Counted from the first letter of the stretch, positions 1,175-17,013 are shown. The stretch: DNA of 64,000 bases from IMGVR_UViG_3300021511_000003:159016-223015; one strand, 5' to 3'. Notes: generated by a model not told the origin, from the letters alone. A program made the numbers and translations.

Positions 1175-1198
1175 CTTTTATATCATGACCTATATAAA

Positions 1199-2640: not shown

Positions 2641-2644
2641 ATAA

Positions 2645-3376: not shown

Positions 3377-3632
3377 CTCCTTTTCCACCTTCATGTAAAT
3401 TATAATAATTATTAGAAGATACACAGTTATATTTTTTATATAAAAAATCTCGAGTTTATTGAGTTCATCTTTACTTTTTGCTTTCTTGATAATTTTTATT
3501 TTAAACTTGGATTTCCATATTTTTTAATACAACACCACTACCAAGATTCAATGGTTTGAATTTTCCTTTGCTTTGCCCTATATATTTTTTACCATTGATA
3601 AGGTTTGTTGTCTCGTATATATAACCGTACAT
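3363..3632 (-). pseudogene. GIY-YIG (Seg-like) homing endonuclease remnant, frameshifted
   Basis: MYGYIYETTNLINGKKYIGQSKGKFKPLNLGSGVVLK then shifted frame KYG...DELNKLEIFYIKKYNC...YNLHEGGKGG. Confidence 0.75.
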
Positions 3633-3898
3633 TATTTCCCCTTAACATTAGCCCAAGCGGTTACTCCCATATACGCACCAATTATAGAGGTCATAGCAAA
3701 ATAAAACCATGTAATTGTTTCAGATAATATATTAAGTTTTTCATTTGAAATTGGAGCGAATAAAAGAATTAATGTAAACGTTAACATAGATAACAGTGCA
3801 ATCCAACCCATTTTTCTTCTACCTCTCCATTTATTCCGTTCTAATTCATATTCTTTTTCTTTTAAATCCAAATTATCTAAAGATATAGGGTCTACCAT
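3632..3898 (-). CDS. small two-TM membrane protein
   Basis: Two hydrophobic stretches (GWIALLSMLTFTLILLF; WFYFAMTSIIGAYMGV). Confidence 0.6.
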   Translation of the reverse strand: MVDPISLDNLDLKEKEYELERNKWRGRRKMGWIALLSMLTFTLILLFAPISNEKLNILSETITWFYFAMTSIIGAYMGVTAWANVKGK

Positions 3899-3923
3899 AG
3901 TATTACCTCTTATTATATTTAAC

Positions 3924-3998
3924 TGGAGCGGACAATGAGATTCGAACTCATAATCACCTGCTTGGCAAGCAGGTACTCTACCTTTGAGCTATGCCCGC
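3924..3998 (-). tRNA. tRNA-Gly(GCC)
   Basis: CCTGC-TTGCCAA-GCAGG; GCGGGCA acceptor, U73, CCA. Confidence 0.95.
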
Positions 3999-4230
3999 TG
4001 TGTTACTCATTGAAATTGTTAAATCATGATATTTTTGTGTTCTTACTTTTTTATGTTCAGCATTTATTGGATGAAGGGAACCAAACACATGACCGAAACC
4101 ATCCTGGTGTTGATGCATAATAATTTCAATCTTTTTCATTTTTGACTTTTTCATTTTTGACTTTTTCATTTTTATTCCTTTCTTGAATGTATAAAAACTT
4201 ATCTACTTTATCAAAATTATTTAAACCTTT

Positions 4231-4596
4231 TTAGATTCCATTTTTAATACAGTTTTTTATGTCACCAATTTTAAATACAAATGTGATCATTGATGGTCCA
4301 CGCCCAAAATCTATTTCAACCCCTCCTATATGCCCGCCAACAAAAGTCATTCCTTTATTTATTTTCATACTATCAAGCTGCTTTACCATGGCTGGTGGTA
4401 TTGGAGGACCAACTGTGATAGTAATATCTTCAGGAACTATAACTGGTTTGAAATGTCGTACTGGTATAAATTGCATTACTTTAGAATCTTTTTTTAAGAT
4501 ACAAGTTTGACCTTCTTCAAATGCATAAACAGAAGGTAATATACATATTGATATAATTAAAATTGATAATATTACTTTAACAATATTTTTTAACAT
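4231..4596 (-). CDS. hypothetical protein with signal peptide
   Basis: N-terminal hydrophobic leader ending VYA. Confidence 0.55.
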   Translation of the reverse strand: MLKNIVKVILSILIISICILPSVYAFEEGQTCILKKDSKVMQFIPVRHFKPVIVPEDITITVGPPIPPAMVKQLDSMKINKGMTFVGGHIGGVEIDFGRGPSMITFVFKIGDIKNCIKNGI

Positions 4597-4605
4597 AATT
4601 TAACC

Positions 4606-5100
4606 TCAATCCCACCAACTTTCTATATGTTTACTCATTAATTTAAATAAGTATTTAAGATCATTACGTTTTGAGTATTGTTCATGTTTATAAGATGCAT
4701 GAAAATCTTTTTTTTCCTGAATTTTGTCTTTTTCGGTTTTAACATTCGGACGAGTTAGGTGAAGCTGATGCAAGTCAGAATTATTTTTACACACTGTGTA
4801 TGACATTTTAAGTTCACCCCATTTTTTGTCTATATCTTTATATGCCATTATATGATATTCATCTTTGATTAATCGGTCCAGAAGATTAATACATACCTTT
4901 ATTTTATTAGCATCATGTTCTGCATTTAAACTTATTCCTTTATATCGAATAAATTGTTCAGTGAGATGAAGTTTGTGTCGAAGAATTATATAAATATAAT
5001 GATTGTCCCAATTTCTATCTTTCCATATAACAGGAAACCATTTTATTAAATTTTTAATACCATTTTTAAAATTGTATAATAATTCTTTAATTTTCTCCAA
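4606..5100 (-). CDS. hypothetical phage protein
   Basis: 164-aa ORF, WFPVIWKDRNWD...HIESWWD, RBS AAGGAG. Confidence 0.65.
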   Translation of the reverse strand: MEKIKELLYNFKNGIKNLIKWFPVIWKDRNWDNHYIYIILRHKLHLTEQFIRYKGISLNAEHDANKIKVCINLLDRLIKDEYHIMAYKDIDKKWGELKMSYTVCKNNSDLHQLHLTRPNVKTEKDKIQEKKDFHASYKHEQYSKRNDLKYLFKLMSKHIESWWD

Positions 5101-5122
5101 TTTATCTCCTTTTTAAGAGTTT

Positions 5123-5208
5123 TGGAGCGGGCGGCGGGATTCGAACCCGCGATGCATAAATGCGTCAACGTGGAAGGCTGATGGAGTACCGGACTCTCCA
5201 ACGCCCGC
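5123..5208 (-). tRNA. tRNA-Gly(UCC) with 14-nt variable arm
   Basis: TCAGC-CTTCCAC-GTTGA; variable region CGCATTTATGCATC; acceptor GCGGGCG/CGCCCGC, U73, CCA. Confidence 0.9.
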
Positions 5209-5313
5209 TATTTATTATTTGATAAATTATATAATTCTTCCATGATTTTTGGATTATCTATCTATATATTCTTCTGTTGCTTTTAACAGTTCCTTTCATT
5301 TGAAATTAAATGA

Positions 5314-5946
5314 CTAAGTTTTTGGAGTTAGATAAAAATATTTTCGTTCGTTATTATATTTACCCATGAAATATTGTCTTTCATATGTATAATATTTTTT
5401 TGTATGTTTTTTCATGTAATTAATTGTATTCATTGAATGAAAAGATATTATTAATATTGGACAATGTTTTGAAAAATCAAATGTACTGAGTATTTTATCT
5501 TCCCAATTCTCTACATCCATTTTTATTAAATCTGGAAGAGGTAGATTATTTTGTTTAATAAAGTCATAAAGAACAACTGTTTGTACTTCACTTTTATATA
5601 TCCTTGAACGATTATCTGTAGGATATTTTATTGAGTCATCATCCCTTCCTAATAAAAAGTTTTTGTCAAATGATGAACCCCCATCTTTTACAGGTACATT
5701 ATATAATGTTAATTTTTCATTTTTATTACTTACGCCAATATTGAAACTATTAATTTTATTTCCAAATTTACTGACTAATAAATTATATGGATTTGAAGCA
5801 GGATCAAATGCATATATATTGACATTGATTTTTATTAATTGATTGAATAAGTTAATTGTATCTCTATTTGGATATGCACCTAAATCATAATAATTTTTAT
5901 AATTATGAAGTTTACATAACTTAACTATCAACTCTTCTTTTGTCAT
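5314..5946 (-). CDS. FkbM-family SAM-dependent methyltransferase
   Basis: YDLGA (motif I), IYAFDP, PDLIKMDVE; ends in TAG. Confidence 0.7.
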   Translation of the reverse strand: MTKEELIVKLCKLHNYKNYYDLGAYPNRDTINLFNQLIKINVNIYAFDPASNPYNLLVSKFGNKINSFNIGVSNKNEKLTLYNVPVKDGGSSFDKNFLLGRDDDSIKYPTDNRSRIYKSEVQTVVLYDFIKQNNLPLPDLIKMDVENWEDKILSTFDFSKHCPILIISFHSMNTINYMKKHTKKYYTYERQYFMGKYNNERKYFYLTPKT

Positions 5947-6045
5947 ATTTTATATGTCCAGATTTTCAATGTTATTTTGTATAATGGTTCTCCATTAACT
6001 GAAATTGGGATTATTTCTGATATATTCAAATCCTTTATTTTAAAA

Positions 6046-6122
6046 TGGTAGCGACAACTGGAATTGAACCAGTGACCTATGCCTTATCAAGACATTGCTC
6101 TACCCGACTGAGCTATGCCGCT
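6046..6122 (-). tRNA. tRNA-Ile(GAU)
   Basis: ATGTC-TTGATAA-GGCAT; canonical cloverleaf, CCA. Confidence 0.95.
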
Positions 6123-6156
6123 ATTTAATATTTGTTCTAATTATTCTATAATAATG

Positions 6157-6236
6157 TGGCTGACGGGGTGGGAGTCGAACCCACATCTTCTTGGTTAACA
6201 GCCAAGCGCTTCACTGCCATTCTGAGCTACCCGTCA
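6157..6236 (-). tRNA. tRNA-Asn(GUU)
   Basis: CTTGG-CTGTTAA-CCAAG; U1-A72, G73, CCA. Confidence 0.93.
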
Positions 6237-6425
6237 AAAAACATTAATACCATTATCAATATGTTTTGCTTCAATGACCATTTTGATATAATCTTCTTCA
6301 GATTTGACTTTCCAATATTTTACAACATATGGAGAATTAAAATATTCAGGATCCGATTCGACTACAATAAAAGGCTTCCAAATTATTTGACCATTTGTAT
6401 GTAAATAATAATAACCTGGTTTCAT
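6234..6425 (-). CDS. small hypothetical protein (true start MKPGYYYLH)
   Basis: ORF-track upstream extension overlaps a tRNA; ATG at 6425 follows AAGGA. Confidence 0.55.
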   Translation of the reverse strand: MKPGYYYLHTNGQIIWKPFIVVESDPEYFNSPYVVKYWKVKSEEDYIKMVIEAKHIDNGINVF

Positions 6426-6443
6426 AAATATCCTTAAAAATTG

Positions 6444-6520
6444 TGGTAGTCCCGGGAGGACTTGAACCTCTCTTCTTACCGTTATAAGCGATGCGCTCTG
6501 ACCAGTTGAGCTACGGGACC
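6444..6520 (-). tRNA. tRNA-Ile(UAU)
   Basis: Loop CTTATAA, anticodon TAT; acceptor GGTCCCG/CGGGACT, A73, CCA. Confidence 0.88.
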
Positions 6521-6582
6521 ATATACATGATTTAATCATCTATATATATTAACTAATGATTTATATTAAATCATTTTTAAAT

Positions 6583-6658
6583 TGGTGGACCGGAAGGGAC
6601 TCGAACCCTCAACCTTTGCCTTGCAGGGGCATTGCTCACCCAATTGAGCTACCAGCCC
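6583..6658 (-). tRNA. tRNA-Ala(UGC), C33
   Basis: G3:U70 pair; loop CCTGCAA. Confidence 0.9.
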
Positions 6659-6666
6659 ATTATGAA

Positions 6667-6746
6667 TGGCGCCCATGACGGGAATTGAACCCGTAAATTA
6701 AGGTTGACAACCTTACGTAGTTCGCCTAACCTACTACCACATGGGC
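6667..6746 (-). tRNA. tRNA-Asp(GUC)
   Basis: TAAGG-TTGTCAA-CCTTA; GCCCATG/CATGGGC, G73, CCA. Confidence 0.93.
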
Positions 6747-7124
6747 ATTAAAATTTTATCTTTCTACTTTTGATCCAGCCTTTTGCTAACCATGATAAAA
6801 GGTCTATTGATAGAATAATTTTATTTTTTTCCTTTAAATAATATTTATATATCTAAAAAGTTTACATTAAAATGAAATATTTTTTTTCATTGAATAAATT
6901 TTTAATTACCTTCATTACAGGCATATTAATTTCCTCTGATTTCTTTTGTTTATAACATTCGACTATTAATCCTTGACTCAATGCAAATTTTTTTACCTCT
7001 TCAACAGTGAATATTTGCTCATAAGCAAAAATATCATTAATATCAAGTAATTTAAAAAAGTCAATATGATTTGTTAGAAATCTAAAATATCGTATTTTTT
7101 CATAATAAATCCTTTTTCAAAAAA

Positions 7125-7198
7125 TGGCAGGTCAGTGGGATTTGAATCCAACTTCTGGGTTTGGAGTCCAGTATTCTTACCGTTAGAACTACTGACCT
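7125..7198 (-). tRNA. tRNA-Trp(CCA), irregular T arm
   Basis: Loop CTCCAAA; AGGTCAG/CTGACCT, G73; T arm one nt short. Confidence 0.75.
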
Positions 7199-7210
7199 GT
7201 AAATATTTTT

Positions 7211-7289
7211 TGGTGACCCCGACGGGACTCGAACCCGTGTATTGAGGGTGAAGGCCTCATATCCTTATGCCTATTAGGACTACGGGGTC
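7211..7289 (-). tRNA. tRNA-Glu(UUC), C33
   Basis: TGAGG-CCTTCAC-CCTCA; GACCCCG/CGGGGTC, CCA. Confidence 0.9.
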
Positions 7290-7791
7290 ATTGTTTAACT
7301 TTTCTACACTTATCACATAATGTTGTAAGCCAACCATCACTATTTAATGTACCAGCTTTACCACATACTTCACATACATATTGAGACAATTCTTCAGCAT
7401 CATTAACAAAATCTTGAATTTTTTCCTCTGTAGATTTCCATATATATTTTCGTTTGAAATGTATGATACTATTATATTGTACACCTAATTTATGATTATA
7501 CATGAAGTTTCGAAATTTGTTTGCCAAAGAATCAATATAAGTTGGTTTATATTCAAGATGATAGTAAAAATTTAATACACCAAATTTTTCTTTGATTTGG
7601 TCAGCAATTATTTTTACTCCTGTTTTGTCAGATATAGTTTGAAGTTCTTGTAATAAATTTTCAAGAATAGCATACCAACCATCACCATGACTCATACCCC
7701 ATGCCATACAAGTATATCGCATATCACCACCATAGTCTTTGAGTATAACTGGGTATTTATTTTTTAGTTTCAATTCAAGTTCTACGTTCAT
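7288..7791 (-). CDS. hypothetical phage protein with C-terminal Cys pairs
   Basis: GDGWY...QIKEKFG...CEVCG...LCDKC. Confidence 0.65.
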   Translation of the reverse strand: MNVELELKLKNKYPVILKDYGGDMRYTCMAWGMSHGDGWYAILENLLQELQTISDKTGVKIIADQIKEKFGVLNFYYHLEYKPTYIDSLANKFRNFMYNHKLGVQYNSIIHFKRKYIWKSTEEKIQDFVNDAEELSQYVCEVCGKAGTLNSDGWLTTLCDKCRKVKQ

Positions 7792-8105
7792 GTGTATAAT
7801 TCCTTTATATCAAAATAAACTATTTTCGAAGGTCTTTTTTTAAAGACCACTGGACGAAGATCATCCGGATGCCATAAATAAGTTTTTATTATTGCAGCAC
7901 GGACATAATTTTCGGTTGTAATCTTGTCTATTTGATAAGGATGACCAGCCATTTTGCGCATAACAGAATTAACACCAAATAATTCTTTAGTAGTTTCTAT
8001 ATCCTCGTTTATAACAACTGTCATACCAACTTTCATTATATCTGGATGCATTTTTAAAATCCTTTTTATTGGTGGACCAGCTGGGAGTCGAACCCAGTTC
8101 CGCAA
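7788..8105 (-). CDS. hypothetical protein (true start probably downstream of tmRNA 3' end)
   Basis: ORF 5' part overlaps tmRNA end. Confidence 0.45.
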   Translation of the reverse strand: MRNWVRLPAGPPIKRILKMHPDIMKVGMTVVINEDIETTKELFGVNSVMRKMAGHPYQIDKITTENYVRAAIIKTYLWHPDDLRPVVFKKRPSKIVYFDIKELYT

Positions 8106-8455
8106 AAATTCAAATTAAGTATCTACACTCATAGTCAACTTTTAGATTTAGTTACCCCCACGTTCAAACACGGAGTTGACATAACAACGGAGCCAACGGT
8201 GTACATTTGCTGGTAAGTTTGAAAATAAGAATGCCAGTTTGCAGTACCATTGCCCATTCTTATTTCGATCTCTTTACGTCGATGCCCCATCCCAATTCAA
8301 GAGAATAATTGGGTGGAACAGATTAAGCAGCTTTTGCGAAATCGGTGTAATAATCGTCTGCAATTATTGTTAGTGATAATGTTTTTACGGAGTAACATAT
8401 CATTCTCCGGAGTGCAACTTTTTTTTCTTTTCCACGTCGAAACCTTTTCTGGCCC
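8070..8455 (-). ncRNA. ssrA: tmRNA, tag peptide (A)ADDYYTDFAKAA
   Basis: 5' GGGCCAGAAAAGGTTTCGAC; 3' T arm CTGGG-TTCGACT-CCCAG and CTGGTCC-ACCA with G3:U70; tag ORF at 8361-8323 after ATAATT. Confidence 0.93.
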
Positions 8456-8463
8456 ATATAAAT

Positions 8464-9021
8464 TTATAAGTTCAATAATATATTTTTAATAAAGTTTCCA
8501 TCAGATCCTTTAAATCGTTTCATGATTGGACCCATTGCTTGCATTTTATTCTTGAATCTACTCATATCAAGCCCTTTTATATATCTAATAATTTCTTCTT
8601 TATTTACTTGAGCAGGAAGATATTTTTTAGCGATTTTAATATTATGTGATATTAATTTATCGTCCAACTTTTGAATTTTATCTTTGACTATTTTTTTAAC
8701 TTCTGCTGGAGTCTTACCAGATACATCAGCTTCTTTTAAAAATTTTAGCTCATACAATCTTCTTTCTTTTTCTTGATTTATATATTTTTTCAATAACTTG
8801 ATGATATCATCATCGGTAATATCTTTTGATTTTTTTCCAGTTTCAGGGAACATACTTATAATTGCTCTTGAAACTGTTTTTTGTGCAATCATAATGTTAT
8901 ATGCTGTTTTAGTTTCTTTACTGTTAGCCAAAAATACAATAACTCCTTTCTTTCTATATTTTATTTCAATTTCCATTGCGTATTTCAGATCAGCTCTTAT
9001 TCTTTTTAATATTTTACTCAT
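8464..9021 (-). CDS. GatB/YqeY domain protein
   Basis: IRADLKYAM...DDDIIKLLKK...KKYLPAQVNKEEI...MGPIMK matches the YqeY pattern. Confidence 0.75.
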   Translation of the reverse strand: MSKILKRIRADLKYAMEIEIKYRKKGVIVFLANSKETKTAYNIMIAQKTVSRAIISMFPETGKKSKDITDDDIIKLLKKYINQEKERRLYELKFLKEADVSGKTPAEVKKIVKDKIQKLDDKLISHNIKIAKKYLPAQVNKEEIIRYIKGLDMSRFKNKMQAMGPIMKRFKGSDGNFIKNILLNL

Positions 9022-9046
9022 TATTTTATCCCATTTATTTTCTGTA

Positions 9047-9118
9047 TGGCCCAGGTGGGGATCGAACCCACGAATGAGGGTTTTAGAGACCCCTGCTCTA
9101 CCACTAAGCTACTGGGCC
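9047..9118 (-). tRNA. amber suppressor tRNA (anticodon CUA), CCA not encoded
   Basis: GGCCCAG/CTGGGCC acceptor, GCTT/GAGC D stem, GGGGT-CTCTAAA-ACCCT, GTGGG-TTCGATC-CCCAC, A73 then TAC. Confidence 0.9.
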
Positions 9119-9123
9119 TCTAA

Positions 9124-9447
9124 TTATAGTAGAAGACTCTTAAGATTATAACTATACATACAGTATGTATATACTAATATAACTAATGAAAAACATTTAA
9201 CTAAAAGAGTTGATTCCCTTTTAGTTAATTGTTTTTTTATTCCTTTGATTGTCAAATATAAAATTAATAATAGAAATGGTATTTTTGTTAATAACATTGT
9301 TGTTTGAATGCCAATAATTCCCATAAGGTAATTAATAATGGGGTTCATTTCTATAGCATCTTTGTCTAAAATAATTATAGTTGATATATAATCAAAAATA
9401 TTTATGAGCCAGATAAATACACAACTGATAATTAAAAATTTATTCAT
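9124..9447 (-). CDS. membrane protein (DUF5658-like)
   Basis: NIFDYISTIII...IEMNPII...TKIP; three hydrophobic helices. Confidence 0.6.
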   Translation of the reverse strand: MNKFLIISCVFIWLINIFDYISTIIILDKDAIEMNPIINYLMGIIGIQTTMLLTKIPFLLLILYLTIKGIKKQLTKRESTLLVKCFSLVILVYTYCMYSYNLKSLLL

Positions 9448-9734
9448 AATAAATTTAACCTTTCTGTAAACTTGCTATTCATATCAGTTGCTATTGCAGT
9501 TGTTTCATTATTCATATCTGGTTCTTTGAACTCAGTGTATGGAATTCCTTCTCTTTTAAATTTTATTTTTAAACTCTCTAACTGGTTCAAACCCTTAACA
9601 CCCAAGTATATTAAGGTACCATTGTTCCAGCGAGAGAGAGGGCTGTGAAGCATATAGTCAGCAACCGCATGACCTGCTTGCACAGCCCTTTGAGATATTG
9701 AAATATCTTTACGCACAATTACGTAGAGCTTCAT
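9444..9734 (-). CDS. peptidyl-tRNA hydrolase 2 (PTH2)-like protein
   Basis: True start MKLYVIVRKDISISQRAVQAGHAV...FKEPDMNNETTAIA. Confidence 0.75.
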   Translation of the reverse strand: MKLYVIVRKDISISQRAVQAGHAVADYMLHSPLSRWNNGTLIYLGVKGLNQLESLKIKFKREGIPYTEFKEPDMNNETTAIATDMNSKFTERLNLL

Positions 9735-10002
9735 CAATCTTACCTTCCCATGATAACATGTAATTTTCAATGACATGTTTACTTGGCTTGTCATTACATG
9801 AAATTTCAATCATATTATATGGAGTTCGATTAAATAATTGACAATAAGCTATATGTTTATGTCTATAGGTCCAACGATTTTCATCCAACCCATGAACAAA
9901 ACCAAAAACTTTATCTTTTCTTGTCTTTTTCTGCTCTTTGATCTTTTGTGCTAAAGATTTTTGCTCTTCTTTTATCTTATTTTTTAATTCCTTGAATGTC
10001 AT
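9709..10002 (-). CDS. hypothetical protein overlapping the PTH2-like gene
   Basis: MTFKELKNKIK...YRHKHIAYCQL; SD AAGGAG inside a hairpin. Confidence 0.7.
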   Translation of the reverse strand: MTFKELKNKIKEEQKSLAQKIKEQKKTRKDKVFGFVHGLDENRWTYRHKHIAYCQLFNRTPYNMIEISCNDKPSKHVIENYMLSWEGKIDEALRNCA

Positions 10003-10008
10003 GGTAAT

Positions 10009-10072
10009 CTCCTTTTTATTTCAGTTTAATTAATACAAAATACAATGTTTTACATTATAACTGAAATAGGAG
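10009..10072 (-). promoter_or_regulatory. SD-sequestering hairpin upstream of the 97-aa/PTH2 operon
   Basis: Transcript CTCCT-ATTTCAGTT ... AACTGAAAT-AAAA-AGGAG, 7 nt before ATG. Confidence 0.7.
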
Positions 10073-10109
10073 GTCCACGACATATCTATGGAAATTGTGA
10101 CTGTGCTAA

Positions 10110-10250
10110 CTAGTCATCAGTCCACTCAAAGTGGCATTCTGACTCGCAACACTTATTTGCACCGTGAGATTTATTAATCTCTTCGGCGTCTTTGGCTTCA
10201 TCTATTCGATGATCGCCAGAAATACCTTTATCCTCTGATTTTCTTTCCAT
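10110..10250 (-). CDS. 46-aa leader ORF ending in TAG
   Basis: Not in ORF track. AAGGAG RBS; MERKSEDKGISGDHRIDEAKDAEEINKSHGANKCCESECHFEWTDD*. Confidence 0.6.
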   Translation of the reverse strand: MERKSEDKGISGDHRIDEAKDAEEINKSHGANKCCESECHFEWTDD

Positions 10251-10346
10251 TATATTTTACTCCTTTGTTAACGTAATACTTCAACATTTATATTATGTTC
10301 TGATAAATGTTGTATAATAGTTTGAGAAATTGATATGGAGTGAAAA

Positions 10347-10433
10347 TGGTGGGGGGTGGAGGAGTTGAACCACTTGCCACCGCCTAACATATTTTGGCAA
10401 CGATTTTACAGACCGCAGTTAGGAACACCCCCC
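10347..10433 (-). tRNA. tRNA-Tyr(GUA)-like RNA lacking a D arm, with a 26-nt variable region
   Basis: GGGGGGT/ACCCCCC-ACCA; GCGGT-CTGTAAA-ATCGT; only GTTCCTAACT between acceptor and anticodon stems. Confidence 0.7.
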
Positions 10434-10642
10434 ATTATTTTAAGTCTTTACGTTTCCTCTCGATTACATATTCAATAACTTCTCCAAACTTATCAAATTC
10501 GATACATTTGAATTTTGTTCTTATATAAAAATAAAATAACCCAAATCTTTTTTTAACTCTATATTTACCCTTACCGTAATTAATTATACGATAAGTTCTA
10601 TTTGTATTTTTAACATGTGCTTTCCCATGATTTTATTCCTCC

Positions 10643-10891
10643 TTAACCTAGTTTTCTTCTAAAATCTTTATGATATATATAGTTACATCCCATACGAATG
10701 CACCATTTTGTAGCTTGATTATTAAGATATAAAAGACCACAATATTGACAATATAACCATGGGGTATTCTTTAATTTAATCGGTTTATGCCGTTCATATG
10801 AATAAGTAAGAGAGGTGTCTTTAATATTGTCTACTGTAATCCACATTCCTTTTTTAGACATATTATGCCTTTCAAAAATGATAATGTACAA
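10643..10891 (-). CDS. small Zn-finger-like hypothetical protein
   Basis: WLYCQYCGLLYLNN...CIRMGC. Confidence 0.55.
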   Translation of the reverse strand: MYIIIFERHNMSKKGMWITVDNIKDTSLTYSYERHKPIKLKNTPWLYCQYCGLLYLNNQATKWCIRMGCNYIYHKDFRRKLG

Positions 10892-10956
10892 GTGCTGAGC
10901 TTAATCTCAGTTTCGTTACCATCAGGAGTTACCCATCACATGGCACTTGTACGTAT

Positions 10957-11034
10957 TGGTAGACGTGGTAGGACTCGAACCTACATATACCATCTTGTAA
11001 GAATGGCGGCTAACCAATTCGCCTTCACACGTCC
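10957..11034 (-). tRNA. tRNA-Val(UAC)
   Basis: CCATT-CTTACAA-GATGG; CCA. Confidence 0.92.
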
Positions 11035-11361
11035 TTATAATTCATCTGTTAAAATTACAAAAGTTATAGAGCCACCTAAAAAAATTGTTACACCTTGTAA
11101 CCATCCAACTGATATAAGAAATATACAAAATAAAGCTAATTCCTGCCAAAATCCAAATGGGTCGATCATTAATCTTACTAATAAATATAACCATAAAGGA
11201 ATTAAAGCAATGATCCAGATGATTGTAATTATAACAAATTTTGCGATAATATTTAAATTTATAATTTTTTTTAATTTCTCTTTAATTGAATCATTTATTG
11301 TCAATATTGTTTTATTTTTTTTTATATTCATTATCTTTCCCTTTGGTTTCATTATTACCAA
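11035..11361 (-). CDS. membrane protein
   Basis: Two long hydrophobic segments. Confidence 0.55.
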   Translation of the reverse strand: MVIMKPKGKIMNIKKNKTILTINDSIKEKLKKIINLNIIAKFVIITIIWIIALIPLWLYLLVRLMIDPFGFWQELALFCIFLISVGWLQGVTIFLGGSITFVILTDEL

Positions 11362-12257
11362 AAACTTTTGTATAATTATCTCGATAGTTTTTATTTGTTG
11401 CCTTATGGGAAGAGTTCATCATGTTTTTACTCATATTAATCCTTTATATATCCATATTCTAAATCTTTTGGTGGTTCTTCTCCAAGACTAATCTTTAATT
11501 TTTCAAGGGCGATTTTAGCTTCTTCGGGCATTTGAAATCCACCAATTTTTGATCCTTGTCCTTCTGCGTGCCATCTCGGATCATTTTCTGAATATAACCA
11601 CCAACTTCCTGTTGTACTTTTGCTATAGAAGCCCATGAATCATCTCCTTCCATTGGTAACCATTGATAATCGTCTTTTTGTAAAGTCATTCCACTCCAAT
11701 ATGAATAAAGTTTTGCATCAATAATGGGTTTGATGTAATTGAATAACTTGCTAGGTATTCCTTCATCTTTTGATACACTGGTAAATCCAGTACAACCTGA
11801 TTCCTTCTTAAATTTACAACGAAAAAGTTTAGTTGTTGGAAGACTATGAGTGGTGTCAACATCATCAACGTAAAGCATCCCACTACATACTTTTAAAAAA
11901 GGACTAATATGGTCGAATTTAAATGTAATTCTAATCATACTATATAATTCTTTTTTTTATGTATTAACTATTTATTTTTCTTTTTCTTTTGTTCTTTCCA
12001 TTCTTGTTTGGAACAAAATTTATACCCGTCAGAATCAACTAAATTATGTGCTAGATCATTATTTACACGACGAATCTTTCCATTTTTTTTAATACACTTC
12101 ATCAAGATTTCCTTTTTTTAGAATTTTATTTACGATTATTTTTAATTCAGGTCTTTTATTTTTGATTTAATTTAAGTAATTATCAGATTTTTCTTTAAGA
12201 AGAAATTCTATTCTTCTTTCTTGTGCTTTAGAACTAAACATAATAACCTTTTTTATA

Positions 12258-12345
12258 TGGCGGAGGGAGTAGGATTCGAACCCACGGAGCTTTGACACCC
12301 AACGATTTTCAAGACCGCCGCCTTAAACCACTCAGCCATCCCTCC
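12258..12345 (-). tRNA. tRNA-Ser(UGA)
   Basis: Loop CTTGAAA, class II variable arm, G73, CCA. Confidence 0.95.
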
Positions 12346-12355
12346 ATAATTATTA

Positions 12356-12658
12356 TTATCCTATACCAAAACAACACACATTATTAAATCGTGATGGTTT
12401 CTCAATGAGTAAATCATACAATTCAGTTTGTGGATTCCATTTATACCATTTCTCCATTCTTGGGAAAAAATATATTCCAGGTTTAACTTCCTCAATTACA
12501 CAGTATGAATAATAACCCTCTTCAGATATATCTAAACTGTTATTTATTACTTCATCTTCTGCAATTTTGAGATTGAAAAAGAATCCAACACATCTAGAAA
12601 ATTTATGTGGTATGCGTGGAATAGTTGTTATAGTATAAATAACTTCATTTTTCAACAT
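12356..12658 (-). CDS. hypothetical phage protein
   Basis: 100-aa ORF, RCVGFF...YCVIEE...WYKW. Confidence 0.6.
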   Translation of the reverse strand: MLKNEVIYTITTIPRIPHKFSRCVGFFFNLKIAEDEVINNSLDISEEGYYSYCVIEEVKPGIYFFPRMEKWYKWNPQTELYDLLIEKPSRFNNVCCFGIG

Positions 12659-12677
12659 ACAGTACTCCTTTTAAAAA

Positions 12678-12763
12678 TGGCGGTGAGGACAGGAGTTGAA
12701 CCTGCATGACTGTTACATCGACTGATTAGCAATCAGCTGCTTTACCATTCAGCACACCTCACC
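12678..12763 (-). tRNA. tRNA-Ser(GCU)
   Basis: CTGA-TTGCTAA-TCAG, class II arm, G73, CCA. Confidence 0.95.
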
Positions 12764-13109
12764 GTTTGTTTTTAATATATTCTTTTCCTTCTATGAGAGC
12801 TTCTATAAAACCATCAATGTTACTTTCTTTTTGTAAAATGAAAGTTTCTTCAAGTTCAACATAACCTGTGAATAACATTATAAATGAGCATTTTATTCGT
12901 TTCCACATACCTTGAAGCCAATTAAGTTCACCCCAATGAGAAGCCCATGCAATTGTTTTATGAAAGTTTAAGAAAATTATTCCTGGAATTTCTTTATCAA
13001 TTTCAAACTCAATAACAACATCATGCTCATTGGAACCACAATCACATTCGACACGATAATATATAGAATCCTCAAAACTATGTGTTTTCATTACATTTTT
13101 ACTAATCAT
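12759..13109 (-). CDS. hypothetical protein
   Basis: 116-aa ORF. Confidence 0.55.
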   Translation of the reverse strand: MISKNVMKTHSFEDSIYYRVECDCGSNEHDVVIEFEIDKEIPGIIFLNFHKTIAWASHWGELNWLQGMWKRIKCSFIMLFTGYVELEETFILQKESNIDGFIEALIEGKEYIKNKR

Positions 13110-13247
13110 TATTTTTCCTTTTAAAGTATGCCCAACCTACCCTAATTGTATCAGTGGATATTCTTATAGAAAATTTTCCACTAAAACCAACTCCCAAGGA
13201 TTTCAATATCGGAAGTCTTTCATTACTCAACGATAGTAAAATATTAT

Positions 13248-13335
13248 TGGTAGCGGAGAGGGGATTCGAACCCCTGTTCTTATTACAAGATCTGGCTTAT
13301 GAGACCAGTGAGCTAGACCACTACTCGACTCCGCA
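13248..13335 (-). tRNA. initiator-like tRNA-Met(CAU) with 16-nt variable arm
   Basis: Unpaired 1:72 (U:U), A11:U24, loop CTCATAA; variable region ATCTTGTAATAAGAAC. Confidence 0.85.
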
Positions 13336-13342
13336 TTAAGTT

Positions 13343-13948
13343 TTATTCTATATTTATAACGACAGCACGTCTGTTTGTTTCCAATGTACTACCAAATATA
13401 TCAGTTTCACCGAATGCTCGGTAGGTGATACGTTTCATATCAATACCTTTGTCAACCAATTCTTTTCTAACTGATTCAGAACGTTTATATGCAAGACCCA
13501 TATTATATTTTTCAGATCCTTCTATGCTGGCATATGCCATAACCATTACTAAGGTATCTGGATACTCCTTCAACATATCAACGATTTTATTAACCTTTAC
13601 CATTTCAACATTGGTGATGATGGAACTATCATATGGAAAAAGGATTACTTCCTCTAATTCTGTAACCGTAATTGGTGCCGGTTTTAATTTCTTTAATGTC
13701 TCTACTTTCTTCAACCACTTGGAATCGGTAATCTCTTCAACTACTTCAGGAACTTCAACTTCTTTTGGACCATGATATAAAACATTATTGTTGGTTTTCG
13801 CTATAATAACATTTCCTTCATCAGTAACAGTTGCTTGATCTGAAAGAGGTGCAGAAAGATCTGTATGTGAAAGAACACTTACACTACTACAACCCATAAA
13901 CATAAATGCTAAAGCAATTGTCAATGTGATATTAATAATACTTTTCAC
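13343..13948 (-). CDS. OmpA C-terminal-like (peptidoglycan-binding) lipoprotein
   Basis: Lipobox FMGC; ILFPYDSS, ASIEGSEKYNMGLAYKRSESV, NRRAV. Confidence 0.85.
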   Translation of the reverse strand: MKSIINITLTIALAFMFMGCSSVSVLSHTDLSAPLSDQATVTDEGNVIIAKTNNNVLYHGPKEVEVPEVVEEITDSKWLKKVETLKKLKPAPITVTELEEVILFPYDSSIITNVEMVKVNKIVDMLKEYPDTLVMVMAYASIEGSEKYNMGLAYKRSESVRKELVDKGIDMKRITYRAFGETDIFGSTLETNRRAVVINIE

Positions 13949-13979
13949 GTTATTTCTCCTTTTTAATTATTCGTTTGTT

Positions 13980-14067
13980 TGGTGGCCCAGGTGGGACTCG
14001 AACCCACACGGGAATATTTCCCACAAGATTTTAAGTCTTGAGCGTCTACCAGTTCCGCCACTGAGCC
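13980..14067 (-). tRNA. tRNA-Leu(UAA)
   Basis: CAAGA-CTTAAAA-TCTTG, class II arm, A73, CCA. Confidence 0.95.
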
Positions 14068-14071
14068 AAAA

Positions 14072-14296
14072 TTAGTTACTAAGTTTATTTTTTACGGTTT
14101 CATCAGTAATTGGAAATCTTCCTTGTATTCTACCACAATCAAGGCAGATTTCAAAGTTAACATAATCACCCTCTCCTATATTTAGATCGGTTGGTACATG
14201 ACCATCTCTTCCCATTTCATTATACATTACACAACACATATCATTACATTTTGCATCGACTTCCATTAAACGGGTACTACCACATTTACATGACAT
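14072..14296 (-). CDS. small Cys-rich protein (true start MSCKCG)
   Basis: CKCGS...AKCNDMC...CLDCG; RBS GAAAGGA. Confidence 0.6.
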   Translation of the reverse strand: MSCKCGSTRLMEVDAKCNDMCCVMYNEMGRDGHVPTDLNIGEGDYVNFEICLDCGRIQGRFPITDETVKNKLSN

Positions 14297-14323
14297 TAAT
14301 ATATTCCTTTCAAAAATATGAAA

Positions 14324-14623
14324 TTGGATCCAAAAAGCAGCCAGAAGTGAATTGATGCTGATAAGAAGCTTCACTTAACCTGGATTTATATTGGTGTTAT
14401 TTTTAACACTCCCAAAACTTAATTCTTTATAACTTTAATCTTGACTGGCGCAATATTTATTCTCGTTGCGGTACGAGTTAAACTTAAGGCTTAATTCTTG
14501 AAACTTGATAATAAGTACCAATTTACATAGTAATATAGCTTTGTAGGCTATTATCAGTAAGATTCATATTTAACCCGATATGAGAGGGCTTATCTATTTC
14601 ATTGTTTACACTAGTGAATCCAA
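14324..14623 (-). ncRNA. candidate structured intergenic RNA
   Basis: 8-bp closing helix TTGGATTC/GGATCCAA spanning the spacer plus several internal hairpins. Confidence 0.45.
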
Positions 14624-14627
14624 AGTT

Positions 14628-15173
14628 TTAAGTTAATGACCGCGTTTTAGGTATGTCTTGAAGGTAGGTTGTTGCATTAATAACTTCAAGGCGTCCCTCA
14701 ATAGTCTTTCCTGATGTTAAATCTTCCCATTTTCTTTGTCCTGACCGTTTAACATTTTCATTATATAATCTTATGATCGTTGGTGCTGCCGAATCTTTCT
14801 CTCTATAACGAACTTGATTTCGATTTGCTTCATTTGTTGATAAAGACCTGAAAGTCTGAATTAATCGCTGACCTGTCTTTCTCAAAACAGTTAACCAATT
14901 ATGAATACTTCTTGTTTCATCATCAATTGTAACCATAGTAATTAGATTGGTGTAGTCGATCATTGCTTTGATATGACAATACTCTTTTTCTAAATCATTA
15001 TTGGATTGAATCAGTTTTACAACCTCTTCACTTTGTGCCTGTTCAGTACCAAAAATTGGTTTTTCATTTGAAAGAAGTGAAGAATATTTTTCAATTTCAT
15101 CACAGTTCTTTGCCATTCGTTTGTCAATGAGTTTTAATTTCTTAAGTCCTTCAATAATTGTCATATTATTCAT
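14628..15173 (-). CDS. coiled-coil hypothetical protein (DIP1984-like N-terminus)
   Basis: MTIIEGLKKLKLIDKRMAKN...; family resemblance recalled, not searched. Confidence 0.55.
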   Translation of the reverse strand: MNNMTIIEGLKKLKLIDKRMAKNCDEIEKYSSLLSNEKPIFGTEQAQSEEVVKLIQSNNDLEKEYCHIKAMIDYTNLITMVTIDDETRSIHNWLTVLRKTGQRLIQTFRSLSTNEANRNQVRYREKDSAAPTIIRLYNENVKRSGQRKWEDLTSGKTIEGRLEVINATTYLQDIPKTRSLT

Positions 15174-15679
15174 TTTTACAATTTCCTTTTGAATAAAAGT
15201 TTAGTTTTAGATGTTATCAATAATAACAAATTTGATAACTGCTACTATAATATTAATTATTGACATTATTATACATAATGAATTAAATTTCATAAAATTA
15301 ATATTACCATCTATATCACAATAACTCAAATAGTTTATTTTATTTTCACATAATACAGAACAACATGGTGAGACCAAACATTTTTTACATGGATCTTTAA
15401 CAAAGAAAATATAAAAAATCCTATGACGAAAACTTTTTGGTTTATTAATGTTTATGCTGTTGTATATCATTGAGTAATAGATTCCCCAAATTCAAATTTA
15501 GCAAAATCAACAAAATCTCTACATCGACATAATAAAGTTACTATATCAGATACGTTTATATTTTCTGCAATTATCGAATCCGGTGATACACATTCTAATT
15601 TATCAGACATGTTTATTATTGATGATTCGAGTTCTTCTATTTTTTTTTCTTTCATAAACATTCCTTTCAGAATCTAAAT

Positions 15680-15758
15680 TGGAAGCCCCTCCAGGATTCG
15701 AACCTGGGAAAATGACGGGTCCAAGGCCCGCCGTGTTAGGCCGCTTCACCAAGGGGCT
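15680..15758 (-). tRNA. tRNA-Gln(UUG), C33
   Basis: GCGGG-CCTTGGA-CCCGT; AGCCCCT/AGGGGCT, CCA. Confidence 0.88.
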
Positions 15759-15829
15759 ATAATATTACCTTTGTCTTTAGAATATTTAAATACAGAATTA
15801 TGTTCTAATTCACCTATATGGATTAAAGA

Positions 15830-15904
15830 TGGAACCCCCAGCAGGATTCGAACCAGCGACTATGAGATTAGAAATCTCATGCTCTTCCTCTGAGCTACGG
15901 GGGC
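15830..15904 (-). tRNA. tRNA-Arg(UCU)
   Basis: TGAGA-TTTCTAA-TCTCA; CCA. Confidence 0.93.
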
Positions 15905-16149
15905 ATTTTTTAAAACCAAACTACTGGAAATTCTATTATTCTATTATTTTCTAATTCATCATTTGCTTTTTGTATAATATTATGTAACTCTTATTTTCGA
16001 AATGTAATACCCATAATACATATACCAAGCAAATATATAAAATATGATTATATTCTTTTTCCCAACTATGCTCCAATAAATAAAAAAATAAAGGAATGAG
16101 TAGATCAAATCACGAAATATGAATTATTATATATATTTCGTTATAATTA

Positions 16150-16226
16150 TGGAGCCGCTGAGAGGATTCGAACCCCCGACCTTCTCATTACAAGTGAGAC
16201 ACTCTACCCAACTGAGTTACAGCGGC
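16150..16226 (-). tRNA. tRNA-Thr(UGU)
   Basis: TCTCA-CTTGTAA-TGAGA; U73, CCA. Confidence 0.95.
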
Positions 16227-16453
16227 TTATATATATCTTAATAATTGTTTAATTTTTATTTCAAGATCACATTTATCAAATTTATATTTTTTCTCCTTCT
16301 CTCCAACCAATATCAGATGATTTACCACATACAGTTTCATATAATTGTAATGGATCAACTTTGTTGTTAATGATACCATGAACAACACCGGTTAAATTAT
16401 TTTCTGATTTTTATATGATTGATTTCATAATTGCGGTCCTTTATTTAAAAAAT

Positions 16454-16540
16454 TGGTACCTGCGGAGGGAATCGAACCCACAAGTCATTTAAACACTAGA
16501 TCCTAAATCTAGCGCGTTTACCTAGTTTCGCCACGCAGGC
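16454..16540 (-). tRNA. tRNA-Leu(UAG)
   Basis: CTAGA-TTTAGGA-TCTAG, class II arm, CCA. Confidence 0.95.
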
Positions 16541-16548
16541 TTATATTT

Positions 16549-16895
16549 TTATTCTTTCGGGTTATCTTCTGATGGGTTTTCGTCAGGATCTGATTGAATC
16601 TCGTCAGTTTTCGGGAGGACTTCATCAACATCGTTTATACCATCATCATCAAGATCACAACTCAGAAGCTGTTCAATTTTTATCATAGTTGATTCTGACT
16701 TGTGAATTTCCATATTACTATCTTTTATGTCTGATCTTTTATCTTTTATTTCACTTTCAAGCTGTTTGATTTCAGTTTCAATGGTTTCAATAGTGTTTCC
16801 CTGATCTACAATGTATATTGACAGTTCAGATTCTATCTGTGTTAATGGAGAACAATACTTGCATAACTCTTCGGTGCTGCTTTAAAAATTCCCAT
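16549..16895 (-). pseudogene. acidic coiled-coil gene with a 1-nt frameshift
   Basis: MGIFKAAPKSYASIV then shifted frame SPLTQIESELS...EDNPKE*; GTTCTCCA lacks one T. Confidence 0.45.
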
Positions 16896-16936
16896 TTTCG
16901 CAATTCCCTTTCGATGGTCAGATTAATTCTTAATGT

Positions 16937-17013
16937 TGGTCTGGATGAGAGGATTCGAACCTCCGACTCCCTGATCCCAGGTCAGGTGCGCTACCAGACT
17001 GCGCTACATCCAG
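16937..17013 (-). tRNA. tRNA-Pro(UGG), C33
   Basis: CCTGA-CCTGGGA-TCAGG; C1-G72, A73, CCA. Confidence 0.92.

What the first reader, a model, noticed from the sequence alone, without database searches (positions are those of the whole stretch)
6583..17013. Four tRNAs replace the near-invariant U33 with C33
Seen: anticodon loops CCTGCAA (Ala-UGC, 6583), CCTTCAC (Glu-UUC, 7211), CCTTGGA (Gln-UUG, 15680) and CCTGGGA (Pro-UGG, 16937). All have C32-C33 and U34, with well-paired stems. The other 18 have U33. Known: U33 makes the anticodon U-turn and is nearly invariant; phage tRNAs have been proposed to carry anticodon-loop changes that evade host anticodon nucleases. Inference: four parallel changes suggest selection, either for nuclease evasion or for C-to-U editing/modification.
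Basis: partly seen in the sequence, partly recalled or inferred. Interest (0 to 1): 0.7.

Follow-up and report, generated by a model that had tools for sequence, protein, structure and literature searches.

The report
Phage tRNAs carrying C33, not U33
Four well-formed tRNA genes of an uncultured deep-sea jumbo phage carry C instead of the almost universal U just before the anticodon; the same change recurs in many other phages but was not found in the bacteria checked, so it looks like a phage-specific trait, and its purpose is still unproven.

Summary
tRNA-Ala(UGC), Glu(UUC), Gln(UUG) and Pro(UGG) all read C32-C33 by ARAGORN and by Rfam alignment (47-64 bits, cut-off 29). The other 18 tRNAs in the window have U33. 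Independent assemblies from three or four other metagenome runs show the same base, so this is not an assembly error.

The window belongs to a 223-kb T4-like phage fragment from hydrothermal-vent and sediment samples. In its relatives, 19 of 236 tRNAs have C33, spread over 10 anticodon types and at least 13 separate origins. One subclade has 0 of 54.

C33 is not limited to this clade:
- A C33 tRNA-Ile(GAU) occurs in phages KVP40, XacN1 and GAP32 and in at least 120 IMG/VR contigs.
- About 2-4% of phage tRNAs sampled have C33.
- E. coli tRNA-Ile has U33, and 0 of 401 Pseudomonadota genomes matched the C33 pattern.

The four tRNAs read the phage's most-used codons. The genome also encodes RtcB, RlaP and a CCA-adding enzyme.

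The best reading, at about 0.4, is that C33 is a tolerated substitution kept because it escapes a U33-dependent host factor such as an anticodon nuclease. Near-neutral drift is a strong rival. C-to-U editing has no support. This is a new variant of a known kind.

The parts
6583..6658 (-). tRNA-Ala(UGC) with C32-C33 (C33 at window 6626). It carries a G3:U70 pair in the acceptor stem and an encoded CCA.
   Evidence: ARAGORN. Loop parsed. Rfam 56.8 bits with alignment. Logan contigs of X1, X2 and X4 cover it with no differences. The orthologue in G001 also has C33, with compensatory stem changes.
7211..7289 (-). tRNA-Glu(UUC) with C32-C33 (C33 at window 7253).
   Evidence: Missed by default ARAGORN and found with -ps95. 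Rfam 51.4 bits at 7214-7289. Sequence read. Contigs of X1, X2 and X4 agree. The clear orthologue in G003 has U33.
15680..15758 (-). tRNA-Gln(UUG) with C32-C33 (C33 at window 15725) and G37.
   Evidence: ARAGORN. Rfam 47.3 bits with alignment. Contigs of X1, X4 and X5, and a variant contig in X2, show no difference at 15725. It is the only C33 Gln among the relatives.
16937..17013 (-). tRNA-Pro(UGG) with C32-C33 (C33 at window 16980), a C1:G72 pair and G37.
   Evidence: ARAGORN. Rfam 64.3 bits with alignment. Contigs of X1, X2 and X4 agree. The anticodon arm equals that of relative G027 except CC against TT at positions 32-33.
2564..17013 (-). tRNA island. It holds 22 tRNA genes (18 with U33), a tmRNA at 8070-8455 and a tRNA(CUA) at 9047-9118, interspersed with small ORFs.
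   Evidence: The island continues upstream of the window with Lys, Cys and Arg tRNAs.
263..1174 (-). RlaP-family nucleotidyltransferase (Pfam 'RNA repair pathway DNA polymerase beta family').
   Evidence: Pfam PF10127, E = 2.9e-21.
1199..2545 (-). CCA-adding tRNA nucleotidyltransferase with an HD domain.
   Evidence: Pfam PF01743, PF12627, PF13735 and PF01966. NCBIfam CCA tRNA nucleotidyltransferase models.
9444..9809 (-). Weak PTH2-like peptidyl-tRNA hydrolase. A strong PTH2 lies just upstream of the window.
   Evidence: Pfam PF01981, E = 7.6e-6. The upstream copy scores E = 4.8e-33.
43675..44832 (-). RtcB RNA ligase. From established knowledge, this family seals 2',3'-cyclic-phosphate/5'-OH breaks.
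   Evidence: PF01139, 276 bits, at G000:202693-203751, which is window 43678-44736. The ORF is listed. RtcB also lies inside the tRNA islands of relatives G028 and G017.

Best explanation
The four genes are working phage elongator tRNAs for the phage's most-used Ala, Glu, Gln and Pro codons. In each, U33 has been replaced by C33. A pyrimidine at position 33 still allows a usable anticodon loop, so decoding is largely preserved.

I infer that C33 is kept because it removes a U33-dependent contact or cleavage site used by a host factor. The most likely factor is an anticodon-loop ribonuclease deployed against phage. On this view the phage tRNAs keep translation going when host tRNAs are cut.

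Shown: the base is real, it is recurrent, it is retained in orthologues, and for tRNA-Ile(GAU) it is found in phages and not in the cells checked.
Inferred: that C33 is functionally tolerated in this host, and that the benefit is escape from a nuclease.
For: - Real and intact: Rfam scores are 47-64 bits with CC at positions 32-33. G3:U70 in Ala and C1:G72 in Pro can be read directly from the sequence. Independent Logan assemblies, including a slightly diverged strain in X4 and X5, show the same base.
- Important codons: GCA 0.50, GAA 0.86, CAA 0.83 and CCA 0.53 of their codon families in the phage's long ORFs.
- Recurrence: 19 C33 among 236 tRNAs of relatives, in Ala, Glu, Gln, Pro, Val, Ile, Asn, Lys, Thr and the suppressor. 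They are scattered over at least five subclades of the capsid tree, while the G008/G028 subclade has 0 of 54.
- Retention: Ala C33 is shared by G000 and G001 with compensatory changes in the D and anticodon stems. C33 tRNA-Ile(GAU) is held by diverged relatives and by 62 distinct sequences (median identity 71%, 20 different stems, all fully paired).
- Position-specific: U33 is 91.5% conserved here, against 98-99% for T54, T55 and A58. The change is almost only to C (19 C, 1 G, 0 A), in a genome of 30% G+C.
- Phages versus cells, measured directly only for tRNA-Ile(GAU): 5 of 188 tRNAs in seven cultured phages have C33, and about 4% in an IMG/VR sample. C33 Ile is 16 of 119 in phages, against 0 of 401 Pseudomonadota genomes, where the U33 form hit 28 of 61 genomes. 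E. coli tRNA-Ile has U33.
- Conflict context: the phage encodes RtcB, RlaP, a CCA-adding enzyme and PTH2.
- Precedent: single substitutions in T5 tRNA-Lys block AriB cleavage (PMC12409363). C33 goes with weaker RNase 2/EDN cleavage (10.1101/815803). A natural C33 in yeast tRNA-Leu(GAG) barely affects function (PMC13492127).
Against: - No nuclease, host or cleavage data exist for this phage.
- U33C does not change cleavage by gamma-toxin (PMC2275089), so C33 is not a general shield.
- Most C33 cases in the clade are single tips of the tree. That also fits short-lived, slightly harmful variants.
- RtcB and the other repair genes do not track C33. RtcB is present in G028, which has none.
- Enrichment of this genome over the phage background is moderate (p about 0.005-0.02).
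- The statistics are not corrected for relatedness.
Confidence: 0.4

Rival explanations
1. Near-neutral drift. Phage tRNAs only supplement the host pool and are under weaker constraint. C is the one substitution at position 33 that the ribosome tolerates, so U-to-C changes appear and persist for a while with no specific benefit.
For: - A natural C33 in yeast tRNA-Leu(GAG) has minimal effect (PMC13492127).
- Most C33 cases in the clade are singletons on the tree.
- Other oddities occur in the same tRNA sets: pyrimidine at 37, one G33, T-loop variants.
- In G015, three of the four C33 tRNAs sit beside a U33 copy with the same anticodon.
- A33 and G33 also occur at low frequency in the IMG/VR sample.
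Against: - The genome is 30% G+C, so a neutral C should decay to T. Yet C33 is kept in Ala (G000 and G001) and in a deep, diverse Ile-GAU family.
- Position 33 varies several-fold more than T54, T55 and A58 in the same genes.
- 0 of 54 in one subclade against 19 of 182 elsewhere suggests a lineage-specific cause (p = 0.009).
- The four tRNAs read the phage's top codons and are single-copy.
Confidence: 0.3
2. C33 acts through the neighbouring wobble base. It prevents host enzymes from modifying position 34, for example the xm5U, cmo5U or queuosine pathways. That would change decoding range or hide the tRNA from nucleases that need a modified wobble base.
For: - All four tRNAs here have U34, and U34 is enriched among non-Ile C33 phage tRNAs (21 of 29 against 397 of 838, p = 0.013).
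- In eukaryotes U33C abolishes Elongator-dependent U34 modification (PMC11096365).
- From established knowledge, bacterial TGT recognises U33-G34-U35, which would bear on the C33 Asn(GUU) tRNAs seen in relatives.
Against: - The bacterial wobble-modifying enzymes are unrelated to Elongator, and their need for U33 was not tested here.
- The commonest C33 phage tRNA is Ile(GAU). Its G34 is, from established knowledge, not a known modification target.
- The U34 enrichment is modest and uncorrected for relatedness.
Confidence: 0.12
3. The C is corrected after transcription: a deaminase edits C33 to U33, so the mature tRNAs are canonical.
For: C-to-U editing of tRNAs exists in organelles, trypanosomatids and one archaeon (established knowledge). 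C32-C33 is a consistent sequence context: 17 of the 19 C33 tRNAs in the clade have C32.
Against: - Searches with the two cytidine-deaminase Pfam families tried found only one gene in the 223-kb record. It is a ComEB/dCMP-type enzyme in a nucleotide-metabolism neighbourhood.
- I know of no bacterial or phage editing at position 33.
- If the C is simply edited back to U, there is no evident reason for it to be kept across diverged phages in hosts from Vibrio to Mycobacterium.
- No RNA run was listed to test it.
Confidence: 0.05
4. Host mimicry: the unknown host's own tRNAs have C33 in these anticodon types and the phage copies were simply acquired from it.
For: The host is unknown, so this cannot be excluded directly.
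Against: - Close relatives differ in which tRNAs carry C33: Glu, Gln and Pro only in G000, Ile only in G001 and G003.
- For one cultured analogue the host side has U33. E. coli tRNA-Ile stands in here for GAP32's host Cronobacter, and 0 of 401 Pseudomonadota genomes matched.
- The literature calls U33 nearly universal in elongator tRNAs (PMC5041475, PMC13492127).
Confidence: 0.05
5. Artefact or dead genes: a sequencing or assembly error, or decaying pseudo-tRNAs.
For: Some neighbours look degenerate. Phe(GAA) has U37 and gets no Rfam match. Asp matches the Rfam model only partially.
Against: - The same base appears in independent assemblies of several samples.
- Covariance-model scores are high and the stems are intact.
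- Orthologues show compensatory changes.
- Identity elements are present.
Confidence: 0.02

Closest known systems
Phage tRNAs proposed to evade host anticodon nucleases through anticodon-loop mutations (van den Berg et al. 2023, PMC10264068). Experimental examples are T5 tRNA-Lys, Thr and Asn against PARIS AriB (PMC12409363) and phage tRNA-Tyr against a retron effector (PMC11555353).
   Same: - These are phage-encoded tRNAs in large arrays whose anticodon arms differ from cellular ones by point substitutions.
- The phage also carries tRNA repair and maintenance genes.
- The two C33 tRNA-Val genes I found in Bxz1 appear in that paper's supplement, in 144 and 142 of 161 cluster C1 mycobacteriophages.
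   Different: - Position 33 is not mentioned in the main text of that paper or of the Sf14 study.
- The proven escape substitutions lie at positions 39 and 41, not 33.
- Here neither the nuclease nor the host is known, so resistance is only inferred.
Natural non-U33 cellular tRNAs: eukaryotic initiator tRNA-Met (C33), yeast tRNA-Leu(GAG) (C33) and Candida tRNA-Ser(CAG) (G33) (PMC5041475, PMC13492127).
   Same: C replaces U33 in a tRNA that still works in translation. The yeast case shows that C33 costs little.
   Different: - Those are single, lineage-fixed eukaryotic cases.
- Here the tRNAs are bacterial-type elongators of a phage. The change covers many anticodon types, has many independent origins, and has no initiator features.
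C-to-U edited tRNAs of organelles, trypanosomatids and Methanopyrus (established knowledge).
   Same: A genomic C sits at a position where the functional tRNA normally needs U.
   Different: No dedicated deaminase was found and no RNA evidence exists. To my knowledge position 33 is not a known editing site.
The phage C33 tRNA-Ile(GAU) type found here in KVP40, XacN1, GAP32 and IMG/VR contigs.
   Same: It has the same C32-C33 loop start, is phage-specific and is intact. It is present in four distinct relatives of this phage (G001, G003, G015/G014, G018).
   Different: The window's own tRNA-Ile(GAU), at 6046-6122, has U33. This genome instead carries C33 in four other anticodon types that are rarely C33 elsewhere (4 of 313).

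Membership tests
Canonical elongator tRNA (Rfam RF00005) | Cloverleaf that scores above the family's gathering threshold | tested here: met
   56.8, 51.4, 47.3 and 64.3 bits against 29.
Canonical elongator tRNA (Rfam RF00005) | U at position 33 | tested here: not met
   C at position 33 in all four, by ARAGORN and by covariance-model alignment.
Canonical elongator tRNA (Rfam RF00005) | Purine at position 37, T-loop TTCRA, and class-specific identity elements | tested here: met
   A37 or G37, and GGTTCGA T-arms. G3:U70 in Ala and C1:G72 in Pro are read from the sequence.
Nuclease-evading phage tRNAs (van den Berg 2023 type) | Encoded by a phage within a tRNA array | tested here: met
   IMG/VR virus record with gp23-type capsid and gp20-type portal genes and 26 tRNA matches.
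Nuclease-evading phage tRNAs (van den Berg 2023 type) | Anticodon-loop difference from the host's cognate tRNA at or near a known cleavage site | not testable with these tools
   The host was not identified. Only an analogue could be checked: E. coli tRNA-Ile has U33 against C33 in phage tRNAs.
Nuclease-evading phage tRNAs (van den Berg 2023 type) | Resistance of the phage tRNA to the nuclease | not testable with these tools
   This needs a cleavage assay. Published U33C data are mixed (PMC2275089; 10.1101/815803).
C-to-U edited tRNA | RNA reads show U where the DNA has C | not testable with these tools
   No RNA run was listed for the region.
C-to-U edited tRNA | A dedicated tRNA cytidine deaminase in the genome | tested here: not met
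   Only one CDA-fold gene was found, and it matches ComEB/dCMP-dCTP deaminase models best. The record is about 71% complete, and a host enzyme cannot be excluded.
Initiator-type C33 tRNA | CAU anticodon and initiator stem features | tested here: not met
   The anticodons are UGC, UUC, UUG and UGG.
Phage C33 tRNA-Ile(GAU) type | Loop CCGATAA in a tRNA-Ile(GAU) | tested here: not met
   The window's Ile(GAU) has the loop TTGATAA. Relatives G001, G003, G015/G014 and G018 do have the C33 type.

The most novel reading that the evidence does not exclude
C33 is a general, so far undescribed mark of phage-encoded tRNAs. It makes them invisible to U33-dependent host factors, such as anticodon nucleases or wobble-modifying enzymes. 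It could even let a phage distinguish its own tRNAs from the host's while host tRNAs are destroyed. This vent phage would be an extreme case, with four such tRNAs. The widespread C33 tRNA-Ile(GAU) of KVP40, XacN1 and GAP32 would be the experimentally tractable case.
Probability: 0.25. Interest if true: 0.8.

Novelty: new variant of a known kind. Interest (0 to 1): 0.6.

Why it matters
U33 is among the most conserved nucleotides in biology, and phage tRNAs are now recognised as counter-defence tools. A recurrent U33-to-C change found in phages and not in the cells checked would show which part of the anticodon loop some bacterial defences read, and how much of the U-turn rule translation really needs.

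The same change sits in cultured phages (KVP40, GAP32, XacN1, cluster C1 mycobacteriophages). The question can therefore be tested directly with tRNA sequencing, allele swaps and cleavage assays, without needing the uncultured vent phage.

Tried and rejected
- Host identification failed.
  - The protein atlas gave no host signal for the CCA-adding enzyme.
  - The tmRNA tag ending in AKAA reminds me of Campylobacterota. That is memory only and was not tested.
- RNA evidence: no RNA run was listed, so editing could not be checked.
- megablast of the tRNA region against cultured phages found nothing.
- A combined pattern for C33 in the four anticodon types across bacterial genomes gave false hits from tRNA-Cys read one base out of register. 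I dropped it and used the cleaner Ile(GAU) pattern instead.
- The GAP32 tRNA-Ile was too diverged to find the E. coli gene. The G015 tRNA worked.
- A literature search for the loop sequence itself was useless.
- Stop-codon recoding: reading TAG or TGA as sense barely raises long-ORF coverage (0.81 to 0.82-0.84). Reading TAA as sense raises it more, as expected in an AT-rich genome. Only three TAG-split ORF pairs exist.
- RtcB does not track C33.
- I considered a shifted anticodon register or an 8-nucleotide loop and rejected both. The 5-bp stems flank exactly 7 loop bases in the covariance-model alignments.

Full report
**Observation.** ARAGORN finds 20 tRNAs and a tmRNA on the minus strand of window 2564-17013. 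Rfam adds Glu(UUC) at 7214-7289 and Trp(CCA) at 7128-7198. Parsing the loops shows C32-C33 in four tRNAs and U33 in the other 18:

| tRNA | window span | loop | C33 position |
|---|---|---|---|
| Ala(UGC) | 6583-6658 | CCTGCAA | 6626 |
| Glu(UUC) | 7211-7289 | CCTTCAC | 7253 |
| Gln(UUG) | 15680-15758 | CCTTGGA | 15725 |
| Pro(UGG) | 16937-17013 | CCTGGGA | 16980 |

The Rfam covariance-model alignments were made independently of ARAGORN. They put CC opposite the consensus CU with top posterior probability. Scores are 56.8, 51.4, 47.3 and 64.3 bits against a cut-off of 29. Five-base-pair stems flank exactly seven loop bases, so a shifted register is excluded.

**Not an artefact.** The stretch is held by several hydrothermal-vent and sediment metagenome runs. 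Logan contigs of X1, X2 and X4 cover Ala and Glu without any difference. Contigs of X1, X2, X4 and X5 cover Gln and Pro. These include a strain in X4 and X5 that differs at nine nearby sites, three of them in the neighbouring tRNA-Thr. None of them differs at 15725 or 16980. X1 may be the source sample, but the others are independent.

**Context.**
- The window is the last 64 kb of a 223-kb IMG/VR virus record, estimated 71% complete.
- It has 30% G+C.
- It has gp23-type capsid and gp20-type portal genes and a UDG-PolB fusion.
- It uses essentially the standard genetic code.
- The tRNA island is embedded in translation and RNA-repair genes:
  - an RlaP nucleotidyltransferase, a PTH2-like hydrolase, a YqeY-like protein and an FkbM methyltransferase;
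  - a CCA-adding enzyme;
  - a strong PTH2 and an HD-domain protein just upstream of the window;
  - an RtcB ligase at window 43675-44832.
- The four C33 tRNAs read the most-used codon of each family in the phage's long ORFs: GCA 0.50, GAA 0.86, CAA 0.83, CCA 0.53. Each is the only copy of its anticodon in the record.
- G3:U70 in Ala and C1:G72 in Pro are present.

**Relatives.** The capsid protein retrieved 30 IMG/VR loci at 63-88% identity, from contigs of 27-312 kb; 29 of the records could be searched. I fetched their tRNA regions and scanned them.
- Of 236 tRNAs, 19 have C33, 1 has G33 and none has A33.
- C33 occurs in Ala, Glu, Gln, Pro, Val, Ile(GAU), Asn, Lys, Thr and the CUA suppressor.
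- Several of these C33 tRNAs score 55-69 bits in Rfam.
- On the capsid tree the cases fall in at least five subclades. The well-supported G007/G008/G028 subclade has 0 of 54 (Fisher p = 0.009).
- Alignments show both retention and turnover.
  - Ala C33 is shared by G000 and G001 with compensatory changes in two stems.
  - The G000 Glu tRNA has a clear orthologue in G003 with U33.
  - The Pro anticodon arm is identical to that of G027 except at positions 32-33.
  - Ile(GAU) C33 is held by G001, G003, G015/G014 and G018, with four different fully paired stems.
- Counting by tRNA backbone gives at least 13 independent changes.
- In the same genes T54, T55 and A58 are 98-99% conserved, against 91.5% for U33.
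- The change runs towards C in an AT-rich genome.
- C32 precedes C33 in 17 of 19 cases, against 63% of U33 tRNAs (p = 0.02).

**Beyond the clade.** As a control I scanned the tRNA clusters of seven unrelated cultured phages.
- Five of 188 tRNAs have C33.
  - Three are tRNA-Ile(GAU) with the loop CCGATAA, in XacN1, KVP40 and GAP32.
  - Two are tRNA-Val genes of Bxz1.
- None of the 30 Ala, Glu, Gln and Pro tRNAs has C33.
- The two Bxz1 Val sequences are listed in the supplement of van den Berg et al. as present in 144 and 142 of 161 cluster C1 phages.

- The hits comprise 62 distinct tRNAs with median identity 71%.
- They show 20 different stems, all fully paired.

A scan that leaves position 33 free (C or T) returned 119 stretches: 16 with C33 and 103 with U33. 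A similar scan for Pro(UGG) gave no valid C33 among about 110.

Across the loci of these two position-33-neutral scans:
- ARAGORN finds 1869 distinct tRNAs, of which 74 have C33 (4%), 10 have A33 and 9 have G33.
- For the four anticodon types of this window the figure is 4 of 313.

On the cellular side:
- E. coli tRNA-Ile(GAU) has CTGATAA.
- The C33 Ile pattern matched 0 of 401 genomes of one phylum (Pseudomonadota).
- The U33 pattern matched 28 of the first 61 of those genomes.

So C33 is a recurrent feature of phage tRNAs. For tRNA-Ile(GAU) it was not found in the cellular genomes checked, and the literature calls U33 nearly universal in cellular elongator tRNAs. This clade is about twice as rich in C33 as phages in general (p = 0.007). 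This genome is richer again, at 4 of 26 (p = 0.005-0.02).

**Mechanism.** What is shown is that the genes are intact, conserved and important for the phage's codon usage, and that C33 is retained and recurrent. What C33 does is inferred.

Published work frames the options:
- U33 is nearly universal in elongator tRNAs (PMC5041475).
- A natural C33 in yeast tRNA-Leu(GAG) hardly affects function (PMC13492127), so C33 is tolerable.
- Single substitutions in phage tRNAs do block a defence nuclease (AriB, PMC12409363).
- C33 goes with weaker RNase 2/EDN cleavage (10.1101/815803), but U33C does not affect gamma-toxin (PMC2275089).
- U33C abolishes Elongator-dependent U34 modification in eukaryotes (PMC11096365).

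I consider escape from a U33-dependent host factor, most likely an anticodon-loop nuclease, the best reading (about 0.4). It fits several things at once:
- the contrast between phages and the cells checked;
- the lineage-specific distribution;
- the rapid switching of which tRNA carries C33 among close relatives;
- the RtcB, RlaP and CCA-repair gene set.

The rivals, in order:
- Near-neutral drift under relaxed constraint (about 0.3). It explains the many singleton cases. It fits less well with retention against AT pressure and with the deep Ile family.
- Interference with wobble modification (about 0.12). It is a variant supported only by a modest U34 enrichment.
- Editing (about 0.05). The only deaminase found is of dCMP type, and no RNA data were available.
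- Host mimicry (about 0.05).
- Artefact (about 0.02).

**Comparison with what is known.** The closest known idea is that phage tRNAs carry anticodon-loop mutations to evade host tRNases (PMC10264068).
- Position 33 is not mentioned in the main text of that paper or of the Sf14 study.
- My literature searches found no description of C33 in phage tRNAs.
- I therefore file this as a new variant of a known kind. Membership in the 'nuclease-evading' class is not established, because neither the host comparison nor resistance could be tested.

**Limits.**
- The host is unknown.
- The statistics treat related sequences as independent.
- ARAGORN calls in IMG/VR loci include some doubtful predictions.
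- The cellular control covers one phylum and one anticodon type.

Noticed in passing
L101:17610-17685 (XacN1), L103:6017-6090 (KVP40), L112:18437-18511 (GAP32); IMG/VR loci L114-L233: A tRNA-Ile(GAU) with the loop CCGATAA (C33) is present in three cultured jumbo phages of different hosts and in at least 120 IMG/VR contigs. In a scan neutral at position 33 it is about 13% of phage Ile(GAU) genes. The same pattern matched 0 of 401 Pseudomonadota genomes.
   Followed up: yes
window 9047-9118 (-): A tRNA with anticodon CUA (an amber-suppressor type, which ARAGORN labels 'Pyl') is conserved in most relatives. Yet the genome reads as the standard code, and only three TAG-split same-frame ORF pairs exist in 223 kb.
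   Followed up: partly
window 8070-8455 (-): A phage-encoded tmRNA (Rfam 137.8 bits) with the tag ADDYYTDFAKAA. Relatives G001 and G008 also carry a tmRNA in their tRNA islands.
   Followed up: partly
window 263-2545, 8464-9809 and 43675-44832; G000 156.7-158.5 kb: A set of translation and RNA-repair genes lies around the tRNAs: RlaP, a CCA-adding enzyme, a YqeY-like protein, two PTH2 hydrolases, an HD-domain protein and RtcB. RtcB lies inside the tRNA islands of relatives G028 and G017.
   Followed up: partly
window 3300-3376 (-) and 6671-6743 (-): tRNA-Phe(GAA) has U at position 37 and gets no Rfam match at E <= 0.1. tRNA-Asp matches the Rfam model only partially (36 bits). Both may be degenerate or unusual tRNAs.
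   Followed up: no
window 5123-5208 (-) and 13248-13335 (-): ARAGORN calls an 86-nt tRNA-Gly(UCC) and an 88-nt tRNA-Met(CAU). Both have a long extra stretch where the variable loop lies, which is unusual for these amino acids.
   Followed up: no
G000:141.3-144.7 kb (L088), upstream of the window: A cluster of a QueC-like 7-cyano-7-deazaguanine synthase, a 113-aa ORF that I read by eye as MazG-like (not searched), a dCMP-deaminase-like protein, and a 267-aa ORF that I read by eye as KdsA-like (not searched). This hints at deazaguanine metabolism.
   Followed up: partly
window 21638-24862 (+): One 1074-aa ORF fuses a uracil-DNA-glycosylase-superfamily domain to a family B DNA polymerase.
   Followed up: no
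L061:13402-13484 (relative G008): A match to the c-di-GMP-I riboswitch (39.1 bits, cut-off 35) lies inside the tRNA region of a related phage.
   Followed up: no
window 6829-7029: Contigs in runs X1 and X4 skip 199 bases between the Asp and Trp tRNAs and carry 5 other letters there. This is a strain-level indel in the spacer.
   Followed up: no
window 12258-12345: Word depth over tRNA-Ser(UGA) is 20-100 times that of the flanking phage DNA in all four runs. Abundant organisms in these samples therefore carry a tRNA-Ser at least 90% identical to the phage copy, which is a possible host clue.
   Followed up: no
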